Source: Chlorokybus atmophyticus
Lineage: Eukaryota > Plantae > Mesostigma and Chlorokybus algae
NCBI GenBank assembly: GCA_009103225.1
Contig: RHPI01002615.1
Span: 318,328 to 382,327 of the forward strand
Direction: 5' to 3'
Length of the DNA: 64,000 nucleotides
Shown here in pieces: positions 18,437 to 62,812 of the stretch; positions within the stretch are counted from its first letter, which is position 1; each line of letters begins with the position of its first letter. The notes beneath the pieces were generated by a model. The model was not told the origin of the DNA. It did not search any database and was given only the letters and a program-made list of their open reading frames with translations. Both the position numbers and the translations under genes were made by a program.

Positions 18437-21102
18437 CTATGACGTCTTTACGTGCCTGCGTGCTGCTGGTAAAGCATCTTTGACTTTTGCAAGAATTTCA
18501 GAAGTAGACTTGTGTATCTGCTGCCACCTGGATTCATACAGCGGCAACGCCACCATCACTATGAACAAACCTGTGTAGCACTCAGCCGTAGTCAGCATTT
18601 TGCATAAAAACAGATGTCAACTGCGGTGTAAACTGCAATGAAGTGGCGGCTGTTTCCTGAGCAAATTCTCACCTAATAGAACCAAAGCGGGGAAGGAAAA
18701 GATTTTGCCAATCGCGGCAAGCGCGTAAAGCGCCAGCACTAGCTGAACAGCAGGTAAAGGGTTGGGATTGGTGGCAACAGCGTGAAGGGTGGTTAGGGTT
18801 CTGTTGATGTCACTGATGCAGCTGATGACACTGCTACGAACTGTTGCCTCGGACACACTCAACAGGGGGAACTCAGGTACCACGCGGCCTCGGCCAATGC
18901 GTTGGAATACAGTCACTGCGGCAGTGAGGAATAGGCGGGCCATCACGAGTGTGAGGAGGAACCGTGCGATGATTACAATGAGTGAGCGCGAGCGAAGTGC
19001 ACTGAACAAGATGAGAGCGGCGATCAGGAGCAACGCGGCATCAACCGGTCGCTGCCAGTAGATGGTGTGTTGCAAGGAGGGCGGGAAAGCGCGCTTCACA
19101 GGTGATGGCTCAGGTGGAGGCGAAACAGGGTTGGGGTTTTTGAGGTCAGAGAAAGAAGCAATTGTACGCCTTTTGGCCTCAGCCAAGGGGACTGCTGGTT
19201 TGTAACCAAACGCCTTCTGTGCTCGTTCAATAGAAAAGGTGCGTGACCGGCCCATGATGCAGATGCGTGCAGGCGTGAACTCCGAAGTGGGTACATGGTA
19301 GTTGAAGTAGTGCAGCAGACCTTCCGACACCCAAGCATACGCCCTTGAAGCACCATAGACCAACCAGAACGGCAGCCACATCCGTGCTCTGTGAGCGGTT
19401 GTCAGAATTACTAGTATGCACATTTGCAGCCAGATGAAGCTCAAGTCAATTGTTCAAAGACTCACCGAGGGTACCCAAGGCCTTCAACAACGTCATAGAG
19501 AAAATCCCAGAATGGCTCTGGCTCACCATTGGTTATGAAGAACGCCTATCAAGCATGAAGTAGTTAACAGAGCGGCCTAGCATAGTAACATATTGAGTGC
19601 TGTTGCATGTATGGCGTCCCTGCACTACATCACAAAGTTTGGCCACGACAAATTGTATACGAACCTTGCCTGAGACGCGAGTGTCGTCCTCAATACTATC
19701 ATGACTGGGGCGTGTGAGAGCAGCTTCGGCGAGAATGTGCGCTTGTGCAACATTTTCCACGTAAGTGTAGTCCATGCAGTTTCGCCCATCACCAATGACA
19801 AACTTCAATTTGCCAGCTTGGGCTGCCGCAACGGCTTTCGGAACCAACAATGGTTCTCCCTCACCGAATATGCCACTCGGACGCAAGGCACAGGTTAACA
19901 AACCTAACCGGCCATCTGCAGCCAGCACCAAGGCTTCTGCCTGAACAGCATTTGAGAAGAATGTTGGTGGTGTTACTGCAATTGGTGCCTGCTGCAACAC
20001 CGAATGAACTGGCAGTGGCAAGCTGTTTTGAACAGAGAGATTTTAGAGCTTTGAAAAGTTTTTCTGGGAACTTCTGTCACTAAGAAAGACACAACGTGCA
20101 CATTATGTTTCGGGCTGTGCATGCACTTGTCACCCTGGCATGCTATGGTACTTTAGTACCTCTGCTTTGGACGCCGAGTACGCATCCAAGGACGGGCTCG
20201 CATATGGCATCGACTCATTAACCAGCTCAAGGTCAACGGTTCCATTGAACACCACGGACGCACTCGATGTGTACACCAGCTTTGCTACGCCTTCCGCCAC
20301 GCAGGCAGATATCACATTTTGCGTACCTGCACGCCAAGTATTGGCTTGTACATCAATTGGGAGTGGGCAAAGCTGCTAGCAATAACGACTTCCACGCAAA
20401 TGCAATGCAATTGGTACATGAAGGTCAGGTGAATGTCTGCTTTTGTTTTAAACGCATGCGCCGCAGTATTTGCATAACTAGGCATGCTTCATGCTAGATT
20501 AGCGCTATACTGCAAGTGGCATTGCTGTCGACAAGCAATGCCATTGAAACAGTCGAAGACCCTGGAGTGCAGGACGTGCTAGACCTAGCGCATTCACACG
20601 CCAACTGACTCCCAGGCAAACTTTGCAAGCAATGTACTCTAAATGTCGACATGCACGCATGTCGAGGACGAAATATAATTATCAAAGCGATCAGCCACGT
20701 GATACCAAGCACATTGACGCGGCGAAAGATGTCGGTGTCGCGTGAGTCGGTGGACGGGGAGGCGACGTGGAAGAGGGCGCGAACGCCGTGCAGGGCTTCG
20801 CGGAGGCCTTTTGGGGCAGCGGGGTCGGCGGTGATGTCGCAGGGGTGGTAGGACGCGCGCCCATCGGTGAGGGCGTCGGCAAGGGCGTCGGCGGCAGGGT
20901 GGCCCGGGCTCAACGCCAGGGACGGCGCCAGATCCAAGATCCTCACCCTCCACCCCGCAGCCAGCAGCGCCGCCACCAGGTGCCGCCCGAGGAAACCCGC
21001 CCCTCCCGTCACTGCAGCAAGCTTGCTCCCCGCCCCTGTCCCGGACGACGACGGCGGTAACGGCGGCGGGGACGCCATGCTTGTCGCCATGCCTGTCGCC
21101 AT
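18437..21102 (-). CDS. 3BETAHSD/D: 3beta-hydroxysteroid dehydrogenase/C4-decarboxylase with C-terminal reticulon domain
   Basis: Rossmann motif VTGGAGFLGRHLV, VNVLG, VYTSSASVVF, Y..SKAE, LRPSGIFGEGE, DYTYVENVAQAHILA and AFFITNGEP..FWDF. Hydrophobic reticulon-like tail (IYWQRP...; LFIVMVALPLYE). The last exon 18570-18437 was inferred. Confidence 0.92.
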
Positions 21103-25600: not shown

Positions 25601-28228
25601 GCCGCAGCGCTCTTGTATGCAGACGCGCTTTTGTGTGCAGCGCTTGCTGATTGCTCAGTGTGTAAACAGCTCTTGTGCGCAGACGGTTACACACTTGTTG
25701 CAAACAAGGGAGGTGATAGAAGTTGCATTGACTCACTGCTCGCGACAAAGTCGCCAGGCTGCTGTGCAGCTCAATTTGTTCCAGAAGGCAAGTCACTGTT
25801 GTACTGCATCATGTTCAGCACTCGCCAATTGCTAGCAGGGCCAGGAGCCACGCGCGCGCACACTCACATGTAGACACACTGCCAGGTAGCACGGGACATC
25901 AATGACGACCTGGTCCAAGTGCACGATCTGGTAGGTGATGTCATACAAAGTATGGAATAAGGACAACCTGCTTTGGTCGCAGTGTTATTCATGCGCAGAT
26001 GGATGCAGATCAACGATGTCATTGACTTTGAGCAAGCCGCAGGCGAGGGAGAAGACACCGTGATAGCGTACGGTCTGTGCGAAGAGGTACATTGCAACAC
26101 TGCGACTGAGATGCTGCGTTCAACAAGCTGCGCGCTCGGCACAGCTCTCGCAGTGCCTCTTACATGTACCGTCTGCAGCTTGACGAGCTCAAGCACCTCT
26201 ACGCTGGGCTTCCTGACTTCCTCGGCCAGGTGCTTGGTTTTGTTCAATTTGGTCGTAGACGCACTGAGTACAGCAGCTGTGAGCAGTCTATGGGTGTCGT
26301 TGCAAGTGCAGGTGGCGCAACTTGAGATGGAGCGCCTGCCTTCAAAGCTGCGTCACCATTATCAAAAACAGGGCACCATCATCGCATACATCCCACAAGT
26401 AGGTGAGCAATATATTTTTGGTCCCAGCTTGCTGTGTTAGGTGGACCCGCGAGAAACTTCATAGGGCACAACCTGTACGCATTCAGCAAAAATGATCGAA
26501 GCAATGCAGGCTACACAATGCGGTTTGAGGGCGAGCGCCTTTCGAATGAAGTCCTGGGAATGCTGCCAGACTTCCAGTTTGCGGTATGGGGAGGTGGTAG
26601 CGTTGCAAGTTGATGCCAGCCTTATGACCCATCCGTTCTTCTGTCACAGTTTGAGGGCAACGACGATGAGGGACATGGAGCGTTTTATTACACGAGCAGA
26701 ACACGCGAGCTCGATGATGAGTTTGGGGATATATACCACAAGATATTAGGTAAGCATTGCCATTGATCAGGCCAGCCGTTCTTTGTTCTGAGGTCTCACG
26801 TGTGTTGGTGTGCTCCTGTATGGCAGATATGGAGTCCACTATACTGCGTGACCTGGAGAGCAGAATACTTGAAAGGAGCGACTCGTTGCAGAATGCTGCC
26901 ATGCTGGCTGCAGAGCTCGACTGGTAAGTGCATGCCTTCTTGCACAGCCATCAAGGCTGCTGTATTGCTACAAATACTGTCGCTCCTGTCTTTTGCCCGC
27001 AGTCTTGTTTCATTTGCTGTGGCGGCCAAGGAATACCACTACGCGCGACCTCAGCTAGTGAAAGACAACGTATGCCGCATCAAAGGGGGCAGGTGCTTGA
27101 ACTGTGATATTGATGTTATGGTCAATGAGCGGTGCATATTGAGGAAGACGTTGCGCAGGCACATGCTGCAAGAAATGGTGGTTGACACCTTTGTGCCCAA
27201 TCACACGGACCTCAGTGCCGAAGGTGGACCGCTTTTGTGTCATAGTTCTCAACATGAGGCATGTGTATGTGTGGTCGCGTATGTATATGAACCTGCTGCT
27301 GGGTCTTTCAGGCAGAATTCAAGTCATCACAGGGCCGAATTGCTCCGGCAAGAGTGTGTACGCCAAGCAGGTGCCTGCATATCATGATCAGCACTGGCAG
27401 TCTGCAGTTTGTCCGCACATTTGTCAATTGATAAGTGCCCAGGTTGCATTGATCGTGTTCCTCGCGCACATTGGGAGCTTCGTGCCGGCCGACGAGTGCG
27501 TCATTGGGTTGACAGACCGCATATTCACAAGGATTGCCAGCCAGGAGTCTGCGGTTGTTCCTCAGTCCACTTTCATGGTGGATCTGCACCAGGTGGCGAG
27601 CATGCTGCGGCACGCCACCAGCAGGTCCCTTTGCATAATCGACGAATTCGGGAAGGGCACGCTTGCGTCCAACGGCGTGGGCCTCGTGTGCGGCATGCTC
27701 AAACACCTCGCCGAACGCGAGCCCCTACCCCCCAAGGTGTTGCTTTGCACACACTTCAGCGAAGTGTTGGACCCAAAGTACCTGCCTGTCACGCCGCAGC
27801 TGTCCTTCCGCACGATGAGTGTGGCCGAGCAGGAGGAGGAGCACTCATCCAACACCAGCGTGACCAACACCGTCCCATCCATCGCATTCCTGTTCAAGCT
27901 GGTTCCCGGCTATGTAGCGCCTAGTTTTGGCATCCACTGCGCCCGCCTCGCCCGCCTCCCCGAGGACGTGCTCAAGCGAGCCGCACACGTGCTTCAGCTC
28001 GAGATGAAGGGCAAGCCTGTTGACCGACTATGCAATGCCGACACGCGCCTGCGGGATGAGCTGTACAAGCGGCTCGTGCGCAAGCTCAAGTCATTTGACT
28101 GCCGCAATGGCGACGTGCAAGCCTTCCTCACGGACGTGCTGGAGGCCTCGCCTTCACCCGCACGCACGGCCAGCACGAAGAGTCACGCCAGCCGCAGCAC
28201 ACGCAGCCAGTCCAAGAGTGAAACATAG
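22614..28228 (+). CDS. MSH5: Meiotic MutS homologue 5 (about 20 exons; start codon ambiguous among 22614/22662/22680)
   Basis: Motifs [110 protein letters not shown] and SFGIHCARLA. No mismatch-recognition domain I, as expected for MSH4/5. Confidence 0.93.
24052..24094 (+). repeat. 20-bp exact tandem duplication (atggcactctcaagttatac x2) in an MSH5 intron
   Basis: Read directly from the sequence. Confidence 0.9.
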
Positions 28229-43820: not shown

Positions 43821-45867
43821 TTTCCAAGCGCATGCCAATAAATGTAAAAATAAGCACAATTCTGCATACGTGGCCGCTTATGGCTGCATGTTGATAAATA
43901 TAATGTGTTACATTAATATTGATAAACATGCTGCAATATGGTGCAATATGGTGCCATATGATTAGCAAATGCTGTTAAGTGTTTCAAAACTTAATAACCA
44001 ACGTAACGTTCACGCCACGGTACGTGCTGCAATACTCAGTCCATAATGCCGAGGTTACGACCATCAAAATACTGCTAACCTGAATTACCTTAACGTTAAG
44101 ATTCAACTAAACGAAAAATTGCATCGTTAGACCACCATTTGGTCACGCATGAGATTGATAAAATGGGATCGCAACAGTGACAACAGCCAGTTGCTCAAAA
44201 AGGCAGCGAAATGGCCAATCATTGCAAAGATGCGTAAAAAGTGCTAAAAAATATCTCAGCGGCAACCGCTTACCAACGGCGACCCAAAATCGCTAGGGAT
44301 TTGGTGCAATTGCGGCACAGTTGTGGTTAAAACGACCGCGTTTTTGGCGGTACGAGGTCGGGGCAGGCCCCATACCCCAAACACATGCCGCCACTACTCA
44401 CCCTCGTTCTAACTGATCCACTCTACCCTTTAACGCTAATTGATTACACGTTATAGTTACTGCGTCATCAAACATGGTCAACAGCCGAACAAGCATTCAA
44501 GTTGTTCAATTATCTCTCATACCATAGCAGACGCCGTATAATCAACCATTGGCTGTTATAATTGATCTTGATAAACATTGGTAAAAGAATGTAACGTGAT
44601 GTAAAAGCGATGTTGATGATTGCCTTAAATGTTATGCAAATTCATTCATTCAGCAATTTTATGATTGCTTGCCATTTCAATATGAATGGCAATAATATGC
44701 CGCACATGCTAACCAATCAAATCAATGTGCGCGACGCATTTAACCAAAAATGACGCGCTTTAAATGTCCAATATCCATACATATTGAAGTATTAAAGAGC
44801 AGATACGGTAGTTTTTGTTTATAATAAGTTAAAAGTGATCGATCGTCACAAGTTTCATTCAGTTGTTTATATGCTATCAAGTACTGGTCGATCCTATCAA
44901 GAAGGAGGGTCCATAATCTTTAAATACAATTGTGAATGATGACCACACTTGGTGTCGATACAAGAACATTTGCTCCATATCATTGTTTACTCAAGTGATC
45001 ACACCTATTGAAATGATTAATAGTGAGCTTGACATACTAGTCGACAAACCGTACCAATCATTTAAGTAGTCAACAACAAAAGTATTACGCAATTATGACA
45101 TCATGAGTTGTACGTGCCACTTCGTGCTGATCGTAATTACTTTACTTTGCAATCAGGTTTGGAGATGAGCGGCACACGACAAAGACAGCAATGGTGGATG
45201 TATGAAATACATCTCGCAGGTGTGCTGTGCTGTAATTCAAGACCCCTAAGGTTGGTTGGTTGACCCATTGGTACCTGCCAATTGCCTGTCCCACTCCCAT
45301 TACATTGCGTAGCACAAAACAGCACTTAAGGTAGCGAGTAGGTGGCCCCGGGTGCAGTAGTGATTGCCTCTGCTTGTTGTGGCTGCTCTGCTTGCCCTCT
45401 TATGCATCTCTGCCTGCGCACGCATGTTTGTGCGTGACATATGACGATCTATACCCTACACAACTAGCTTCATTTGCATCAACTAGTCATTATAGGCAGT
45501 TGATAGTCCGCACACAACATCATAGCCAGCCACTACAATCTACTTTTCAGGAAAAACATAACTCAATCAGCAACTCAAAAAGCTATGTAAGCAACTCATC
45601 AGGCATCGGGCTACACGTTGCGCTCAGTTTGCATGAACTTGTGTCTCCACTGCTGTATAGAACGCATGCAAAGCAAACGCCTCCCCCCCTCCAACTCCAT
45701 CCCACACCCTATACATAGCAGCAGCCTCCACTCCCTTAGCGCTGTTCCCAACTCATTTATCAGTGCAAAAGCCATAAATATAAGGTACTATAAGTACGCC
45801 ATATATATACATATATATATAACCATTCCTTTTTGCCAACACAACATTGCCACAAGTCCTCTCTCCC

Positions 45868-47118
45868 TCACTGTCTGATCGCCTGGAACAGGTCTTGAAG
45901 CCGCATGTTGGCATTGGCCGCCCCGTCCGGCAGCACAAATTCCATGAAGACGGTCCTGCACCCGGGCGCTGCACATCTAAACACCCTCACCTTGTCCTCC
46001 CCCTCCTCACCGTCATCCTCACCCTCACCCTCACCCTCTGCACGTGTCAAAGCCAACGACACCTCCTCGCACGCCACAGCGTGCGCCAAGCACACGCGCT
46101 CAGAGGAGAGGATTTGTTGTTGTTGTTGCTGTTGTTGATGTTGTTGCGTCTGTCGTTCTTTCAGTCGCTCAATGGCAGCGAGTCGGTTCTGTTCGGCTCG
46201 GCTGATGGACTGAAGCTCGGGTATCACCATGGTTGCCTTGGGAGACGAATACACCTCATTGTTGTTGTCGTTGTTGATGTTTTTGGGTTGTTCCTCCAGC
46301 GCTTCATTCGATAGGTATCTTTGCGTGGGGACTTCACTACCATCATCATCATCATCATTAGCAGCTTCGTTATCAACTTGAACAACAGGAGACTCTTGAT
46401 GTTGATGTCTCATCCCCTCCGAAGACACCGCAGCCGCAACATCATCAAACCTTAGCGCCTTCTGAACCCTGTTGTGGCCTTCATCACCAACATCACGACT
46501 CCTAGGTTGTGGTGGTGGTGGTGTTAGTTGTTGTGTTGGTGTCACTTGTTGTGTTGGTGTCAGTCGTTGTTGTGGTTGTTGTGTTGGTTGTTGTTGTTGT
46601 GTCGTTGTCAGTCGTGCTCGTTGTCTCTCAATGGCAGCGAGTCTGTTGCGCTCCATGCGTTCACGCTGCTCGGGCGTGATGCTCATGCTCATGTTGTTGG
46701 CTGCAATAGGAGGCGTCCCTGGAGGAGTCAAGTGGACTTGTGCCCGTTGTTGTGCCTGTAGTTGTGCCTGTTGCAAATGGGGTGACGACAAGTGGCCTTG
46801 TTGTTGGTTTTGTTTGAGGCGTAGTTTGTTGATGGCAGCGAGTCGGTTCTGTTCGCTTCGTCGGCGCTGTTCGGGCGTGATGTTGACGAGTGTGGGGCTG
46901 CTTGCTGGGGTGAGAGGAGGTGTTGATGGTGTTGGCGTGGAGTGCAATGGTGGTGTTGGGTTGGGAAATAGTGCTGTGGGGCGAAGAGGAGAGGAGTAGA
47001 GAGAGTGGGGGTGGTGATGATTAAGGGTTATTGTCGCGTTGAGCATGACGCTGCCGCTGGTGTTGCTGCCCAACCCTGACTCGTCCTCGTCCTTGTCCTC
47101 GTGATCCTCTTCCTCCAT
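45868..47118 (-). CDS. Orphan 416-aa protein with three RPA32C-binding-like helices and a C-terminal Cys/His module
   Basis: Uninterrupted 1251-nt ORF with three copies of (ITPEQ)RxRxExNRLAAI(E)R, Gln/Pro-rich linkers and a C-terminal CxxHxxxC...CxxxxC. An in-frame TAA lies 30 nt upstream, so the ATG at 47118 is the start unless an upstream exon is spliced in. Confidence 0.8.
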   Translation of the reverse strand: MEEEDHEDKDEDESGLGSNTSGSVMLNATITLNHHHPHSLYSSPLRPTALFPNPTPPLHSTPTPSTPPLTPASSPTLVNITPEQRRRSEQNRLAAINKLRLKQNQQQGHLSSPHLQQAQLQAQQRAQVHLTPPGTPPIAANNMSMSITPEQRERMERNRLAAIERQRARLTTTQQQQPTQQPQQRLTPTQQVTPTQQLTPPPPQPRSRDVGDEGHNRVQKALRFDDVAAAVSSEGMRHQHQESPVVQVDNEAANDDDDDGSEVPTQRYLSNEALEEQPKNINNDNNNEVYSSPKATMVIPELQSISRAEQNRLAAIERLKERQTQQHQQQQQQQQILSSERVCLAHAVACEEVSLALTRAEGEGEGEDDGEEGEDKVRVFRCAAPGCRTVFMEFVLPDGAANANMRLQDLFQAIRQ

Positions 47119-48481
47119 GTGCTGTGGTTGTTGTGGTTGTTGGCGCCTTTAATTCTCTATCCCCTGATTCTCTCTCTGACGTAGTATGTGCCCTCGATGC
47201 GCGCGAGGCGTGTGTGTGGTTTTGCCTGTGCGTTTCAACAAGAGGTTGTAAGCAGCTGTTATAACAAAGAGGGAGTGACCAACAAGAGTACAGCTTGGCA
47301 GCTACCTGTTTCCGCGCGCGTGTGCGTGCACATGCGCATGCAGAAACAAAGAGCTGTGTGCATACACGCACGTGCGTGGGCGTTGATGTTGTTTTGGACA
47401 ATGAGACAATCCAGCAAATAAAGTACACTGGAAAATGAAACAACAGCCAAAAAAGAAACAGAAACAGAAACAGTAAACAGCGAACCATGGAGGGGGGGGG
47501 GGGAGGGGGGCACAACAAAAGCACAGAAAGCACAACAACCCCACGTAAAGACAAACACAAAATGCTGAGGACATGAGAAACGCGTGTAAACATGGAGCAG
47601 GGCCTGCGAGTGAGCGTATTTGCATGCACATAAAAACAGCTGCATCTACGTAAAGACACACAAGAATACTACCACACTATCACAAGAGATTACACCATAG
47701 GGTATGCATACCACCAAATAGACCCATGCACATGCTGTTATGGACACATTTCTCCTGCAAATGCACTTCTCTATCTCACATTTACATGCGGCTGTATGAG
47801 CCTGCAGCTGCTGTGGATACTTGATAACACTAGCAACGAAGTGATGCATGCATATAAGGCGGGATCAATGAGCTTACTTGTTTCAAGCTGTCACCAGAGC
47901 CGCAACATTATGGGACAAGAAATTGACATTGAACGCCCAGCAAGCAGGAGTTTGCACTCGCTCTCTTGAACTCAAAAGGTGTCCTCTTTACTAATCGCAC
48001 ACACTCACTTACGTACATTGACGTCTGCAACAAGCCTGAAGCTCCTGGCAAACGCCGCCGCCGCCGCAGCCGCCGGCCCACAATGCAGGGCCGAAAAGTT
48101 CTCTCATAAAGCAAACATGTCAGTCATAATGTAACAATCACGTCCTGTGACAGCATAACGCGTGACGCTCACTGTGTCGCGCGCTGCGGTTGTCGCTGCA
48201 CGCCCGCAGCCGGGCATCCAGTCCCACCCACACACATAGCCGTTTGGCTGCCGATTGCATTCCTAATGGTAAAGTCATCCCTATCTGAAGGCGAGCGCCA
48301 CGTAGCAGGCGGCGGCGGCAGACGAGGAGGAGGAGGACGAGGAGGAGGCTCAGGTGATAGAGGTCAGAAAACTTCTAACTGTCAGATCTTGGCAGCATGC
48401 GGCGGTGACGGTAGCAGCCTGGCGTTGTTGGCGCCGCCACACGCATGAAAGACAGAGCCGCTTTGGAGCGTATCTAGACAG

Positions 48482-48490
48482 AAACCCTAG
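48482..48490 (+). promoter_or_regulatory. Telo-box variant (AAACCCTAG) about 100 bp upstream of the Gly-rich gene
   Basis: Exact motif followed by a GA/CT-rich leader. Confidence 0.55.
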
Positions 48491-48586
48491 TTGATTGTTG
48501 AGTGTTGAGTGTTTGGCAAACGAGACCCCAAGCCATTATTAGAGAGAGAAGAGAGAGAAAACTCTCCTCTCTCTCTCTGCAAGTCA

Positions 48587-48917
48587 ATGTCCATTTTCAG
48601 CAGGAAAACTCCTGTTCCTAGCCCGGCCGAAGATGACGGCGAGAAGGTGAATGATGCCACAACAGTGTGTTTGTAATCAGTATCTGTTTTGTGCATGCTT
48701 GCCGCTTTGTCCACTTTGATGCGTTTTGGCACACATACTTGACACGCAAAGTGCAATGCAAGGCTGGATTTGCAGCGAATGTGACTCAGTAATATCACAT
48801 GTCATAGCCAAGCAATGACAAAAGGATTGCTTATATCAAGCACGTGAAAATGTTCCACCTCCAGGCCGCATTGTGCCGCATTGTAAAACTGTCAGGCATA
48901 CACCTGTGCGTGTGCGT

Positions 48918-48948
<31 letters not shown>

Positions 48949-50021
48949 GTATTGCAGTCGTGTGTCTATCATCCTTCTGTCCACAACACCGCCATCCATG
49001 ATTCTAATGCTTCGGTACAGAGCACACACGCATGTACACGCTTGGCGTGGATGCCACATACGCGTCAAAAGCAGTGTGTAAATGCACATACATACATCGT
49101 GCGCACATACACCTTGATGCAAAAGCATCATACACTCGTGCATGCGCACTAACGATGTTAACTGCAAACAACACACCGTCAGGGTGGCAGATGTCCTGTG
49201 ACAATCAGTACTGAGATAAAACATACTTGTACAGTATGCATGTGCTTTGCAACCAACTTCTACTTTGACCGACATGGACTTGCCTTATTCCTTTGCCAGA
49301 GGGAGTTTGATTTCACAGAGAAGCCCACTCTTGTCGAGCCGGAGTGGGACCGCGCTGAGGTGAAGTGGCTTCCGCTGCGGCCGGACGAGGAGAGGGAGGA
49401 GCTGTTCAAGCCAAAGGTCGCGCCGCTCATCGTGGGACCAGCAGCGGGATTTGGCATCGGGTGCGTGATGTGTTGTGTTTGTTGTAGAGTGTGTAAGACG
49501 GCAAAGAGTTGTCGTGTGTCAGTGCAGCTGCGAGTCTGCAGGGCTTGCGACGAGCGTGCTTGTATGTGTGTTGGCGAGTGCATACCTGCGCTTGTGGGCG
49601 TGTACATGCATGCCAGCGCGTGTGTGCCTGTTGCCGTGCTCATGAGCGTGTGCCAGTACGTGCGCGCGCGTGTGCTCGCGTATGTGTGCACATGTGTTCA
49701 TACTATACTGTGCATGTCTGCTTGCGCATGTGACTACATTCCAACATATCCATCCTCACCCCTCCCTCCCCTTCTCCCCTCCCTCCCAGTTGCGGCGCCG
49801 GTTTCGGCGTGGGTCTTACGGGCGGCCTCGGCTTCTCCTCCCACCTGTGGGGTTCCCTCCGTCTCGGCATCGGTTTCGGCGGCGGCTGCGGCGTCGGGAT
49901 GGGCTACGGATACGGGGTCGGGAAAGCCATCAAACTGCCGTTCCTGAGGAGAGAAGAGGATGATTTCAATGTGAGGAAACTGAAGGGGCCGAAGAATATG
50001 TCGCTGACTTATGATGGATGA
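48587..50021 (+). CDS. Small glycine-rich membrane protein (TGD5/At4g10330-like family), exons 48587-48646, 49300-49460, 49790-50021
   Basis: GPAAGFGIG|CGAGFGVGLTGGLGF...LRLGIGFGGGCGVGMGYGYGVGKA matches the plant GxGxGCG membrane-hairpin family as I remember it. A telo-box lies at 48482. Confidence 0.72.
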
Positions 50022-59452: not shown

Positions 59453-62400
59453 ATGGCGGCGGCGATGGAGGTGGCGACCATGCCCGAGGTCGTGTGCGTG
59501 TATGATCAGGAGCGCAACCGCATTGTGGTACATATGTGCTTATTTTCATCGGCGTTTGGCTGTACGTGGCACAATGCTGAACTGTTACATTGCATACGTA
59601 GCTTGGAGTTTGGCTATTTTCTCAGCATACCCTGTCATAGCTGAGTTGCTCGTACAAAATCGCTCATTGATGTAGTCTTCTCTAGTCAAGTACACCTTGT
59701 AGGTAGTGCATAGAGCATAGCATCTAACCATGCATGCTAATGACTGACTGTATTTCATGAGTACACTGGCGCTCTGTGCAGCAATCTACATGTAACCTCT
59801 TGTCTGAGCACAGCTTTATTAATTGTGAGCGGTTTCGGTGGCTCAGAGCGTATATAAATGCAGGTTCTGCATGCTTAATATGATTGTTGCACAACTCTTG
59901 GTGTCCAAGCATGGTCACAATTTCCTTGTGCACTCGCATTGCTGATCCAGTAAAATTTGCATTATGGCAGGATGCTTTGCGTCGTGCTGTTGCCAGCGGA
60001 GCAACATCAGCCGATGCGGCTGTGCAGGCACTGAGAGAGGGAATTACTTCACTGCAAGACTCACAGGTATACTGTCGAGTTACGCCTGTACCATGCAACT
60101 TGAGAATCCTCAAGGTCAGTTGCCCAATTTTCTCTGTTTTGCGTACAGGGTGCACAGCCACTGCGTGAGCTGAATGGTGAAGAGAAGATTGTTGTTGAGG
60201 GTGCTTTTCGATATCTGCTTGATGAGTACACGGTGCGTTCGGCCATGCCGTATATGAAGCATGCATGCAGTTGGTTTGTGCAGCAGGACAGCTGTCATCA
60301 TTGTGCAACTCAGTGTGCGATTTGCAGCGCAGTGCGTATACCGCGAATGCTCCGGTCATGCAGCACAGAGGCGAACCTCCTGGAGCTGCACCAATCATGC
60401 CGCGTCTTTTGGGTAAGCATGTTGTGCACAACAACCTATGCACACAACCAACATTGACGTAACCTGTGCTGCTTGACAGATCTTGCTCTCTCACTGTGTG
60501 AGTCCAACAAAACGGAAGCCGGGCTAATCCTCCTCCTGTTTGAGGACCTGCTTGAAGGCTGCAGCATAGCGGACTGCGGGGAGGCCTTCACGTACATGGA
60601 GTCCAAGCTTGCAATCATTGGCAGGAAGGACATATTCCTTAGAGGCAAGCTGATCGTGCTGCGCACGTGCACGGAATTGCTGCGCCGGCTGTCCAAGTGC
60701 TATGACCTGGTGCTCAGCGGCCGAGTGCACATGTTCCTGGCCAACCTGTTCCCGTTGAACGACAAGTCGGGTGCCAACCCGACAGGCGCATTTAATCTGA
60801 GCAACATTACAACCTTTGAGGACGAGCAAGCGGCAGCAGGCTCGCTCCCGGAAAGCAACGGTGGCAAGCCTCTTCTGGATTACAACTTCTACAAGAGCTT
60901 CTGGTCCCTGCAAAAATCCTTTCAGATCCCGTCCACGGTGATCCAGCCCGGCGGCTGGAGCCAGCTGGTGTCCACTCTTAATGTGGTCTTAAACATATTT
61001 GAGTCCCAACCGTTGTCGGCTTTTGACACCTCCAGCCACAAAGACAGTAGTAACCATGACCTTAACTTCTACGACACCAAGTACTTGACGTCCAGCAAGC
61101 TCATGCCTTTGCAGCTCCGGGATCCCAACTTTCGCCGCCATATGCTCGTACAGTGCTGTATCCTCTTTCAGTATCTCAAGGTACACATCGTGTCCACGTA
61201 CAGGTTTGGTAAACTCTCGCAATATCTTTTGGTGTCAAGCTAACAACCTTCTGCCGACTCGGTAGGATCCAAAGAACTTGAAAGACCAAAAGGAGCCCGT
61301 GTTGAACGAGAAGCAGATGGCTGAGTTCAACTCAGTGCAAGCCCGAGTGCATACGCTGCTAGAGGCTACCCCACCACATGGCGCTGATTTCCTTAAGGCT
61401 ATTCTGCACATCCTTGACCGAGAAAATGCATGGGTACGCACACATCTGCCACGACTTTGTGCGCAATTGCAACTCTGCAACTACTACTACTTTGGCTGCT
61501 GTCTATGAGAATGCAGAAATTGAATTGCTGTTCCTTCCCTTGATGTTGTAACATGCTCCCCAGATGGCATTGCATTCGCGCGCGTGTTCATCTCAGCAGA
61601 GCACTTGCTATTGATCAGGTGGCTTGGAAGAGAGCCGGCTGTCCGGAGATGGAAAGGCCGCCCGAGCGCGCGGTGAGGTCGGCAGCGCAGGCGGCCTCAA
61701 TGAGGAAGCGCAAGCTCCCCCCCGGTGGTGCGGGCGGCGTGCGTATGGGCAACCCAGAGCTGGACCGCTTGTGGAACATCTCCGCAGACAACCTGGCGTT
61801 CCTGAAGACCCGTGCACACACGCGGCTGCCGGACGTGGTGGAGTTCCTGCAGCCTATGGCGGAGCAGCTGGACCCCGACGCTGGCATCGATGAGGAGTAC
61901 AAACTCAAGAACGACCGCGTGTACTGCTGGAAGGCCCTTCGCCTCATCGCACGTGCGCAGCTACCGTCCTTCCCCGCCGCTGCCGTGGAAGAGGACCTTG
62001 AGAAGGTTGTTCCGTCCATCATAGCCACCGCGCAGAGAGCCAATGATGCAACAAGCCCGACCGCTCAACAACAACAGCAGCAGCAGACAATCACCAACCA
62101 GGACACCCAAGACCATGCAACACCAATCAGTACTACTACTACTCCCCCTCCTTCAGTAACAGGTTCTGGTGCTGCCCCAACGCCGCCACGCGCTGCTGTT
62201 TCAACCGAGCAGGCTGCCATCACTTCGCCCCAGACCGATGCCAAGCCCGCCATCGCACCAATAACAGAGCCAGCCAGTGCATTGCAAGCACCGGCTGCAG
62301 TGGAGCAACAGCAACAACATCAGCGCATCAGCGCCAATGACAAGAAGTCGGCTGCAGTGACAACAGCAACAACTCCTGAACCACCAGCAGCGGGTCAACA

Positions 62401-62812
62401 GGTGAAAGCAGTGACAACAGCAGGAGCTCAGCCTCGGCCGGCTGCTGCTGCTGCCGCTGCTCCACAATCTCCAACAGGGAGGGTGATCAGGAGGCCTCTC
62501 GCCTCAGCCTCGGACAAGCAACCCAAAGCAGCAGAGTCTCCGTCATCAATCCCCGCGAAGCGCCCCTTGCCCGAGGCAGACACACCCATCACAGCAGCGG
62601 CAGCGAAGGTCCCTTCCTCAAACCTTAAAGCTGCCACAGCACAGAGTCCAGCTGCAGCGTCCTCCCCACAGCCGGCCTCAACACAAGTAGTTAGTCCCAC
62701 AGCAGCAGCTAAGCAGCACGCGCAGCTGAAGACGGCAGCAGCCACGCCACCTGCCAGCACACCAAAGGAGGGAGGGTCTGAAGTGCAGAAGCGGAGAAGG
62801 ATACAGAGGTAG
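59453..62812 (+). CDS. THO1: THO complex subunit 1 (HPR1/THOC1)
   Basis: LLLFEDLLEGCSI.DC...F.YME, GKLIVLRTC.ELLRRLSK..D..LSGRVHMFLA..FPL.DKSG.N, DYNFYKSFWSLQ, KYLTSSKLMPLQLRDPNFRRH.LVQC, MGNPELDRLW and YKLKNDRVYCWKALRLIAR. Confidence 0.95.

What the first reader, a model, noticed from the sequence alone, without database searches (positions are those of the whole stretch)
45868..47118. Orphan protein with three tandem RPA32C-binding-like motifs plus a putative Zn module: candidate multivalent RPA adaptor
Seen: an intronless 416-aa ORF with ITPEQRRRSEQNRLAAINKL (~46822-46882), ITPEQRERMERNRLAAIERQ (~46621-46682) and ISRAEQNRLAAIERL (~46155-46210). Two copies share atggcagcgagtcggttctgttcg at the DNA level, which indicates internal duplication. 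The linkers are rich in TP/TQ/SQ, and the C-terminus has CLAHAVAC...CAAPGC around an acidic loop. Established: SMARCAL1, TIPIN, XPA and UNG2 each use one LTxEQxxRIExNxxxALxR-type helix to bind the RPA32 C-terminal winged-helix domain, usually attached to a catalytic or partner domain. Inference: three copies with no enzyme domain suggest a scaffold that binds several RPA molecules on ssDNA, for which I know no described family. The H-x3-C...C-x-C end partly recalls the RPAIN C-terminal finger but lacks its first CxxC.
Basis: partly seen in the sequence, partly recalled or inferred. Interest (0 to 1): 0.8.

Follow-up and report, generated by a model that had tools for sequence, protein, structure and literature searches.

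The report
Orphan protein with three RPA-docking helices
An expressed gene, apparently confined to one small group of algae, encodes a floppy 416-residue protein carrying three copies of the short helix that DNA-repair proteins such as TIPIN and Rad14/XPA use to dock onto the single-strand-DNA-binding protein RPA; actual binding to RPA could not be tested here.

Summary
A 416-codon ORF lies at 45868-47118 (-). It carries three copies of one helix motif, and two copies share an exact 24-nt DNA stretch.

A profile of the three copies searched against all PDB sequences ranks yeast Rad14 residues 2-23 and human TIPIN residues 186-218 first and second. Both are published RPA32C-binding motifs. None of 5000 shuffles of either peptide reached the real score.

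AlphaFold predicts only these three helices with confidence; most of the rest is predicted disordered. The gene is transcribed in a run showing spliced joints. It has a 5'-UTR intron, and an in-frame stop separates the upstream exon from the CDS.

No relative appeared among 1.84 billion representative proteins, in three word searches, in Pfam or in the ESM Atlas. No TIPIN, XPA, RPAIN or SMARCAL1 domain is present.

The "Zn module" is four cysteines in a weakly predicted small alpha/beta unit with no fold or family match, so it remains unsupported.

RPA binding and multivalency are inference. I had no referenced RPA32C sequence, so no complex was predicted.

A ~98% identical relative shows near-neutral change in the linkers, so the gene may be young.

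First readers noted this same stretch in two entries, this finding's own and one from an overlapping window.

Verdict: a new arrangement of a known motif, of moderate interest.

The parts
45868..47118 (-). Coding sequence of 416 aa plus stop, all within one exon
   Evidence: ORF list. RNA contigs of run X1 cover 45721-46102 and 46150-47224. The relative's indels total 21 letters, a multiple of three, including a 12-nt deletion near codon 124. None of its 10 listed substitutions makes a stop.
46804..46884 (-). Motif copy 1, residues 79-105 (N-I-T-P-E-Q-R-R-R-S-E-Q-N-R-L-A-A-I-N-K-L-R-L-K...)
   Evidence: Alignment A1. The AF2 helix spans 82-107, with pLDDT 82-87. It aligns without gaps to Rad14 and TIPIN.
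46603..46683 (-). Motif copy 2, residues 146-172 (S-I-T-P-E-Q-R-E-R-M-E-R-N-R-L-A-A-I-E-R-Q-R-A-R-L...), the most canonical copy
   Evidence: The AF2 helix spans 149-172, with pLDDT 73-82.
46144..46224 (-). Motif copy 3, residues 299-325 (…S-I-S-R-A-E-Q-N-R-L-A-A-I-E-R-L-K-E-R-Q), which lacks the T-P-E-Q cap
   Evidence: The AF2 helix starts at 304, with pLDDT 88-93 over residues 311-330.
46172..46195 (.). Exact 24-nt DNA repeat, copy in motif 3
   Evidence: One search found 2 exact matches where shuffles gave 0. The flanks are diverged (42 of 78 nt identical), which points to a short gene-conversion tract or a recent duplication.
46832..46855 (.). Exact 24-nt DNA repeat, copy in motif 1
45871..46110 (-). 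C-terminal module, residues 337-416. It holds Cys343, Cys350, Cys382 and Cys387 around an acidic loop (361-375), and ends in an amphipathic helix
   Evidence: Folded alone, AF2 gives helix, three strands, helix, with mean pLDDT 64 and pTM 0.50. No match came from PDB sequences, Pfam, Foldseek or VIA-align (best Z 3.6).
47077..47118 (-). Acidic N-terminus, residues 1-14; the first 20 residues carry net charge -9
47119..47225 (-). 5' UTR part of exon 2, with an in-frame TAA at 47149-47151
   Evidence: Translation. The X1 contig reaches 47224 and then joins 48016. This stretch differs from the relative at 6 places between 47151 and 47194, against 10 places in about 1000 nt of CDS.
47226..48016 (-). 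Intron in the 5' UTR, GT..AG on the minus strand
   Evidence: The joint 47224->48016 skips 791 nt with ends CT..AC on the plus strand (cut +1), in one X1 contig with 30 letters on the short side. Boundaries were read from the sequence.
48017..48046 (-). 3' end of exon 1 (non-coding here); its true 5' end is unknown
   Evidence: One search shows only about 30 letters. Its reading frame was examined.
45721..45867 (-). 3' UTR as far as an RNA contig reaches
   Evidence: X1 record 1 covers 45721-46102.

Best explanation
This is a real, transcribed, lineage-restricted gene. It encodes a mostly disordered, Q/P/T-rich, probably nuclear protein whose confidently predicted elements are three basic amphipathic helices, plus a weakly predicted C-terminal unit. 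The helices belong to the same sequence class as the RPA32C-binding motifs of TIPIN, Rad14/XPA and SMARCAL1. Each helix most likely docks on the acidic face of the C-terminal winged-helix domain of RPA32. The inferred mechanism has two parts. First, three docking helices on flexible linkers would give avidity for ssDNA coated with many RPA molecules over free RPA. The protein would then either occupy RPA32C against other clients or bridge neighbouring RPAs. Second, the proline-directed sites T81-P and T148-P sit at the helix caps, where added negative charge could weaken binding. Shown here: the ORF, the repeats, the motif similarity, the disorder-plus-helix prediction, the transcription and the lack of relatives. 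Inferred: RPA32C binding, stoichiometry, regulation and any role for the C-terminal Cys module.
For: The profile of the three copies ranks Rad14 2-23 (E 0.03) and TIPIN 186-218 (E 0.17) first and second of 177,635 PDB sequences. Both are listed as known RPA32C-binding motifs in PMC11387677 (Fig. 3 legend) and PMC9407234. Shuffle control: the real scores are 21.7 and 20.0 bits, the best shuffles reach 13.5 and 12.4, and 0 of 5000 reach the real score. A gapless alignment shares T-[PE]-E-Q-x-x-[RK]-hydrophobic-E-x-N-[RK]-x-x-A-[IL]-E-R. The helices are rich in basic residues, which fits the published electrostatic interface, where charge reversal of 4-6 basic residues abolishes binding. AF2 gives confident helices only at the motifs, in an otherwise disordered chain. 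The gene is transcribed and spliced. In a ~98% identical relative none of the 7 amino-acid changes falls in a motif. An exact 24-nt identity links copies 1 and 3.
Against: No binding test of any kind was possible. The individual E-values (0.03 and 0.17) are marginal. Copies 1 and 3 have Ser and Ala where Rad14, TIPIN and copy 2 have Leu, Ile or Met. The gene has no detectable relative anywhere. It changes almost neutrally between two close relatives, with 7 non-synonymous against 3 synonymous changes. The absence of changes in the motifs is not significant (P about 0.18 by my estimate). Its GC3 of 0.53 is below the 0.61-0.79 of conserved genes in the window. No E2F or MSA promoter element was found. 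Short basic helices can be promiscuous.
Confidence: 0.5

Rival explanations
1. The gene is a young, weakly constrained, lineage-specific gene with little or no selected function. On this reading a short piece encoding an RPA-docking helix was copied from a genuine RPA partner (for example the organism's TIPIN or SMARCAL1-type gene). It then multiplied inside a low-complexity, CAA-rich transcript.
For: There are zero relatives among 1.84 billion representatives and in three word searches. The substitution pattern against a 98% relative is near neutral, 7 non-synonymous to 3 synonymous, with indels in the Q-rich linkers. GC3 is atypical and the codon-usage preference for the frame is weak. The exact 24-nt identity between copies implies recent duplication or conversion. 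Two other runs of the same study show the neighbouring gene (X2) or nothing of this gene at 90% identity or more.
Against: The ORF is intact in both relatives, with indels summing to a multiple of three. The three helices and the C-terminal part carry no listed amino-acid change. The transcript is spliced and assembled at moderate depth. A captured motif would still bind RPA, so this rival concerns selection more than biochemistry.
Confidence: 0.22
2. The helices are basic amphipathic helices with a different partner. Candidates are another winged-helix domain (such as STN1), nucleic acid, importin (acting as a nuclear localisation signal), or self-association as a coiled coil. The likeness to RPA32C motifs would then be convergent.
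For: The motif is short and rich in R, E, Q, A and L. The same profile also touches two mitoribosomal proteins, mS135 and mS152, at E about 0.9-1. AF2 extends helix 3 through the poly-Q stretch to residue 362.
Against: The two best hits in the whole PDB are precisely RPA32C-motif segments. The match covers 22-33 residues in a single register and is lost on shuffling.
Confidence: 0.2
3. The protein is a highly diverged member of a known RPA-partner family (TIPIN, XPA/Rad14, RPAIN or SMARCAL1) whose other domain has become unrecognisable or lies in missed exons.
For: It has an RPA32C-type motif, an acidic cluster and four cysteines, which loosely recalls the order of elements in XPA.
Against: No Swi3, XPA_N, XPA_C, RPA_interact, HARP or SNF2 match appears even at E up to 10. 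The Cys spacing C-x6-C-x31-C-x4-C is not the C-x2-C-x17-C-x2-C that I recall for XPA. The protein ends 29 residues after the last Cys. The upstream exon is cut off by an in-frame stop, and the RNA contig ends in a 3' UTR.
Confidence: 0.03
4. The transcript is non-coding, and the long ORF is a by-product of low-complexity sequence.
For: Long antisense ORFs of 155 and 175 aa overlap it. Tandem trinucleotide repeats are common in the region. The codon-usage signal is weak.
Against: An open stretch of 416 codons is preserved in a relative despite several indels. The thrice-repeated 20-residue helix matches a known protein motif in this frame only.
Confidence: 0.05

Closest known systems
RPA32C-binding motif of TIPIN (human residues ~186-218) and of Rad14/XPA, SMARCAL1 and UNG2
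   Same: It is a basic amphipathic helix of about 20 residues inside a disordered region. The shared signature is T-x-E-Q-x-x-[RK]-hydrophobic-E-x-N-[RK]-x-x-A-[IL]-E-R. Rad14 and TIPIN are the top two PDB hits of the repeat profile.
   Different: The known carriers each have a single RPA32C-type motif that I know of, attached to a functional domain: Swi3, the XPA zinc finger with its DNA-binding domain, HARP with SNF2, or a glycosylase. Here there are three copies and no recognisable domain. Binding is not demonstrated.
Rtt105 (yeast) and RPAIN/XRIPalpha, the RPA chaperones and import factors
   Same: These are small proteins without enzymatic activity whose job is to hold RPA. They are listed as the RPA chaperone and the nuclear import factor in PMC8210275. 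They are the nearest functional analogy for a domain-less RPA binder.
   Different: There is no sequence or family match: RPA_interact_N, M and C were not hit at E up to 10. As far as I recall, Rtt105 and RPAIN are not known to use tandem RPA32C-type helices.
ETAA1, XPA and NEIL1-type bipartite RPA binders
   Same: These use more than one contact with RPA to gain affinity, with RPA32C as the recruitment site and a weaker second site (PMC9407234, PMC11387677). The acidic N-terminus and acidic C-terminal loop here could in principle serve as RPA70N-type contacts, which is speculation.
   Different: In those proteins the multivalency comes from different contact types on one RPA. Here it would come from three copies of the same contact type, which implies several RPA molecules.

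Membership tests
RPA32C-binding short linear motif class (TIPIN/XPA/Rad14/SMARCAL1/UNG2) | Sequence signature shared with proven motifs | tested here: met
   The repeat profile ranks Rad14 2-23 and TIPIN 186-218 first and second in the PDB (E 0.03 and 0.17). 0 of 5000 shuffles reach the real score. The alignment is gapless.
RPA32C-binding short linear motif class (TIPIN/XPA/Rad14/SMARCAL1/UNG2) | Helix-forming, basic segment embedded in a disordered region | tested here: met
   AF2 predicts helices at 82-107, 149-172 and from 304, with block pLDDT 73-93, while the flanks are below 50. Each copy has 5-8 Arg or Lys residues.
RPA32C-binding short linear motif class (TIPIN/XPA/Rad14/SMARCAL1/UNG2) | Physical binding to the acidic surface of the RPA32 C-terminal winged-helix domain | not testable with these tools
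ITC, NMR or a pull-down is needed.
TIPIN / Csm3 / Swi3 | Swi3 domain (PF07962) N-terminal to the RPA motif | tested here: not met
   Pfam scans of the whole protein and of its pieces at E up to 10 gave no such hit.
XPA / Rad14 | XPA_N C4 zinc finger plus the XPA_C DNA-binding domain | tested here: not met
   No Pfam hit. The Cys spacing is C-x6-C-x31-C-x4-C, and only 29 residues follow the last Cys.
RPAIN (RPA-interacting protein) | RPA_interact_N/M/C domains, including the C-terminal CxxC...CxxC finger | tested here: not met
   No Pfam hit at E up to 10. The protein contains no CxxC pair.
SMARCAL1 / HARP | HARP domains and an SNF2 ATPase | tested here: not met
   No Pfam hit. The protein is 416 aa and mostly disordered.
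Zinc-binding module (any zinc-finger family) | Four ligands in a recognised spacing or fold, or a match to a zinc-finger family | tested here: inconclusive
   Four Cys are present. The best family hit, zf-CGNR, scores E 0.16 and 12.3 bits against a cut-off of 24. The AF2 model of residues 330-416 has pLDDT 64. No fold match was found (Foldseek E at least 0.44; VIA Z at most 3.6).

The most novel reading that the evidence does not exclude
The protein is a dedicated, enzyme-free, trivalent RPA32C adaptor. It would read out arrays of RPA on ssDNA through avidity, and either cluster RPA-ssDNA or shield RPA32C from TIPIN, SMARCAL1-type and glycosylase clients. Proline-directed phosphorylation at the helix caps would switch it off. 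I found no description of such an RPA regulator in the two literature searches made for one.
Probability: 0.25. Interest if true: 0.65.

Novelty: new variant of a known kind. Interest (0 to 1): 0.45.

Why it matters
RPA32C is a hub that many replication and repair factors compete for, each through one short helix. A natural protein made of three such helices and little else would be a ready-made probe or competitor for that hub. It would also show how a docking motif can be copied and multiplied to build a new regulator. If earlier notes of this scan are right that the genome is the streptophyte alga Chlorokybus, the case would also bear on RPA-partner wiring in the green lineage, which, as far as I know, lacks XPA. 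The gene's narrow distribution and weak constraint limit its general importance until binding is shown.

Tried and rejected
**Searches for relatives (all blank)**
- The full-length word search scored 8000 low-complexity candidates and found nothing.
- The word search on motif 2, residues 136-176, gave 16 candidates and no hit.
- The word search on the C-terminus, residues 337-416, gave 88 candidates and no hit.
- phmmer against 1.84 billion representatives found 0 proteins at E 0.001 or better.
- The ESM Atlas gave nothing for the whole protein or for residues 296-416.
- The exact-sequence look-up found no record.
- HMMER's bias filter could hide relatives of such a Q-rich query. The C-terminal search was meant to offset this.

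**Family and fold searches**
- Pfam gave only DUF7194 (E 0.021 for copy 2, below its cut-off), DUF1936 and zf-CGNR.
- The C-terminal module matched nothing in PDB sequences, Foldseek or VIA-align wide (best Z 3.6).

**Other tests that led nowhere**
- No E2F or MSA promoter element lies in 47900-48500.
- Codon-usage frame scoring favours the ORF's frame only weakly, with a training set of just 472 codons.
- Rfam finds nothing in the window.
- I considered MIT-interacting (MIM1), UIM and PIP-box readings of the helices from memory. I rejected them because the register and length of the match favour the RPA32C class.

**Step not run**
- Complex prediction was not run. No RPA32C sequence is encoded in the window or was returned by any search, and the tool's references cover only bacteria, archaea and phages.

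**Paper not held**
- The paper on the SMARCAL1-RPA32C structure (PMC4020579) is not in the library.

Full report
**Observation.** The minus strand carries a 416-codon ORF from the ATG at 47118 to the stop at 45868-45870. Its translation has three copies of one motif, centred on the invariant string N-R-L-A-A-I at residues 91, 158 and 311. Aligned as 41-residue units (alignment A1), ten columns are invariant. Outside that core the DNA of copies 1 and 3 is only 42 of 78 nt identical. This fits a short conversion tract or a recent duplication better than an old duplicate held only by protein-level selection. A profile of the copies finds no further copy in any frame of the window.

The protein has only four cysteines, at 343, 350, 382 and 387, flanking an acidic E/G/D loop. 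It has 17 S/T-P and 6 T-Q sites but no S-Q. Its N-terminus is strongly acidic.

**Gene model and expression.** One run (X1) and two others from the same study were laid on 44300-49800. Their records do not say whether they are RNA. They behave as RNA, however. The neighbouring plus-strand gene shows a clean GT..AG joint from 48644 to 49298 in X1 and X2, and contigs lie on exon-like blocks only.

For our gene, a 1156-nt X1 contig covers 46150-47224 and then jumps to 48016. The skipped ends are CT..AC on the plus strand, which is GT..AG on the minus strand. Reading the sequence places the intron at 47226-48016. A second contig covers 45721-46102; the break between the two lies in the CAA/CAG repeat.

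So the gene is transcribed, the coding sequence sits in one exon, and there is an upstream exon. In this genome that exon cannot add coding sequence, because an in-frame TAA lies at 47149-47151, 11 codons before the ATG. Only about 30 nt of exon 1 are seen, so the transcription start is unknown.

**The relative.** The X1 contigs are about 98% identical to the window, so they come from a close relative and not from the sequenced strain. The ten listed substitutions in the CDS are 3 synonymous and 7 non-synonymous. None makes a stop, and none of the 7 falls in a motif helix. Gap letters total 21, a multiple of three, including a 12-nt deletion in the Q-rich linker near codon 124.

This is roughly neutral change in the linkers with the frame preserved. 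The lack of changes in the motifs is not significant on so few events (about 1.5 expected, P about 0.18 by my estimate). The 5' UTR differs at 6 places between 47151 and 47194, a denser rate than in the CDS, which fits the ATG at 47118 being the start. One of these changes turns the upstream TAA into CAA in the relative (see noticed in passing).

**What the motif is.** Pfam gives nothing for the whole protein or its pieces above noise. A profile of the three copies searched against all 177,635 distinct PDB sequences returned six hits at E 10 or better. The top two were yeast Rad14 residues 2-23 (E 0.03) and human TIPIN residues 186-218 (E 0.17). These are the segments the literature lists as RPA32C-binding motifs:
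- PMC11387677 aligns [quoted passage not shown].
- PMC9407234 describes the shared signature and shows that basic residues of the XPA motif are essential.

Each E-value alone is marginal. Still, it is very unlikely that the two best hits in the whole PDB would by chance both be members of this handful of motifs. A shuffle control shows the match is not compositional. The real scores are 21.7 and 20.0 bits, the best of 5000 shuffles reach 13.5 and 12.4, and none reaches the real score.

Anchored on N-[RK], all five sequences align without gaps: T-[PE]-E-Q-x-x-[RK]-hydrophobic-E-x-N-[RK]-x-x-A-[IL]-[EN]-[RK]. Copy 2 is the most canonical, with Met at the hydrophobic position. Copies 1 and 3 have Ser and Ala there, and copy 3 lacks the T-P-E-Q cap.

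**Structure.** AlphaFold2 without an alignment (none can be built) gives a mostly disordered chain with mean pLDDT 54.6. Its only confident parts are helices at 82-107, 149-172 and from 304, with block pLDDT of 82-87, 73-82 and 88-93. A helix-in-disorder layout of this kind is what a docking motif looks like.

The last 87 residues folded alone give a helix, three strands and a helix, at mean pLDDT 64 and pTM 0.50. The C-x4-C pair sits between strands 2 and 3. That is compatible with a small metal-bridged unit but is weak evidence. Foldseek against the PDB finds nothing at E below 0.4, and the exhaustive VIA-align search peaks at Z 3.6. PDB sequence and Pfam searches of this part are blank apart from sub-threshold zf-CGNR and DUF1936. 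The "Zn module" therefore remains a pattern of four cysteines, no more.

**Relatives.** None were found.
- phmmer against 1.84 billion cluster representatives returned 0 proteins at E 0.001 or better.
- Word-based searches with the whole protein, with motif 2 and with the C-terminus all returned nothing.
- The ESM Atlas gave no usable hit.
- The exact sequence is not on record.

The only known homologue is the ~98% copy in run X1. In X2, from the same study, the neighbouring gene is seen at roughly 92% identity, but nothing of this gene beyond low-complexity matches. This fits fast divergence but does not prove it. Earlier follow-up notes of this scan name the genome as the streptophyte alga Chlorokybus. 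I did not test this. A 2021 transcriptome study of cryptic Chlorokybus species exists (PMC8611356) and would fit the coded runs, but I cannot confirm the link.

**Mechanism.** Shown: three copies of a helix of the RPA32C-motif class, on flexible linkers, in an expressed protein without other recognisable domains. Established knowledge: such helices bind the acidic face of the RPA32 C-terminal winged-helix domain through a mix of electrostatic and hydrophobic contacts. Reported Kd values are 3.6 µM for XPA with RPA and 200 nM for the NEIL1 motif with RPA32C, and reversing the charge of a few basic residues abolishes binding.

Inferred:
- Each copy, most safely copy 2, binds RPA32C.
- One RPA has one RPA32C, so three copies imply up to three RPAs per molecule. 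That would favour RPA-coated ssDNA through avidity.
- The outcome could be competition with other RPA32C clients, or bridging and clustering of RPA.
- The T-P dipeptides at the N-caps of copies 1 and 2, and the many other S/T-P sites, suggest proline-directed phosphorylation as a switch.
- The acidic N-terminus and acidic loop could contact basic RPA surfaces such as RPA70N. This last point is speculation.

I put about 0.5 on binding of RPA32C by at least one helix, and about 0.25 on a genuine multivalent adaptor function.

**Rivals.**
- A young gene that captured and multiplied a docking motif without much selected function (0.22). It is supported by the orphan status, near-neutral change and atypical GC3.
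- A different partner for the helices (0.2).
- A diverged TIPIN, XPA or RPAIN (0.03). This is contradicted by the absence of every defining domain.
- A non-coding transcript (0.05).

**Comparison and novelty.** In mechanism the protein resembles the RPA32C-motif proteins. It is not a member of the TIPIN, XPA/Rad14, RPAIN or SMARCAL1 families, because each defining domain was looked for and not found. The nearest functional analogies are the enzyme-free RPA handlers Rtt105 and RPAIN, with which it shares no sequence. My two literature searches for tandem or plant RPA32C motifs found no description of a protein built from several RPA32C-type helices. I file it as a new variant of a known kind.

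**Limits.** The decisive computation is a controlled complex prediction with the organism's RPA32C. It could not be run, because no RPA32 sequence was available by reference and I did not type one from memory.

Noticed in passing
window 47149-47151 (-), with exon 1 around 48017-48110: The in-frame TAA, 11 codons upstream of the start codon, reads CAA in the ~98% identical relative (plus-strand A>G at 47151). In the window's sequence the same frame stays open back through the splice into exon 1, to an ATG near 48100. The relative might therefore make an N-terminally extended protein, while in this genome the same stretch would be an upstream ORF. The transcription start is unknown.
   Followed up: partly
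window 48356-49460 (+): This is a head-to-head neighbour gene, at most about 340 bp from the last mapped base of our exon 1. It is spliced (GT..AG intron 48645-49297) and has the deepest contigs in X1 and X2. The long ORF 49198-49947 overlapping its second exon has no Pfam match. Its function is unknown.
   Followed up: no
window 27182-28228 (+), 61553-62812 (+), 18617-19444 (-): Conserved eukaryotic gene pieces lie in the window: MutS domain V (E 1.8e-44), the C-terminal part of THO complex subunit 1 (E 1.7e-18), and Reticulon (E 2.4e-13). They show that this is an intron-containing eukaryotic genome.
   Followed up: no
PDB chains 9hqv_Ys (mS135) and 9fi8_HO (mS152, Toxoplasma mitoribosome): The motif profile weakly matches a P-E-x-L-R-K-R-L-E-R-N-R-K-A-A-L segment in two lineage-specific mitoribosomal proteins (E about 0.9-1). 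This is probably chance, but it shows that the helix type is not exclusive to RPA partners.
   Followed up: no
window 45847-46314 (+) and 46472-46999 (+): Antisense ORFs of 155 and 175 aa overlap the coding sequence. They are rich in Cys, Gly, Val and Leu and arise from the reverse complement of the CAA/CAG-rich sense strand. I take them for artefacts of low complexity.
   Followed up: partly
window 47489-47538, inside the 5'-UTR intron: The intron holds a 19-nt G run on the plus strand (C run on the gene strand) and short AAACAG and GCACAACAAAA repeats. Low-complexity contigs from the runs pile up on such tracts and on 46508-46691, which inflates the apparent depth there.
   Followed up: no
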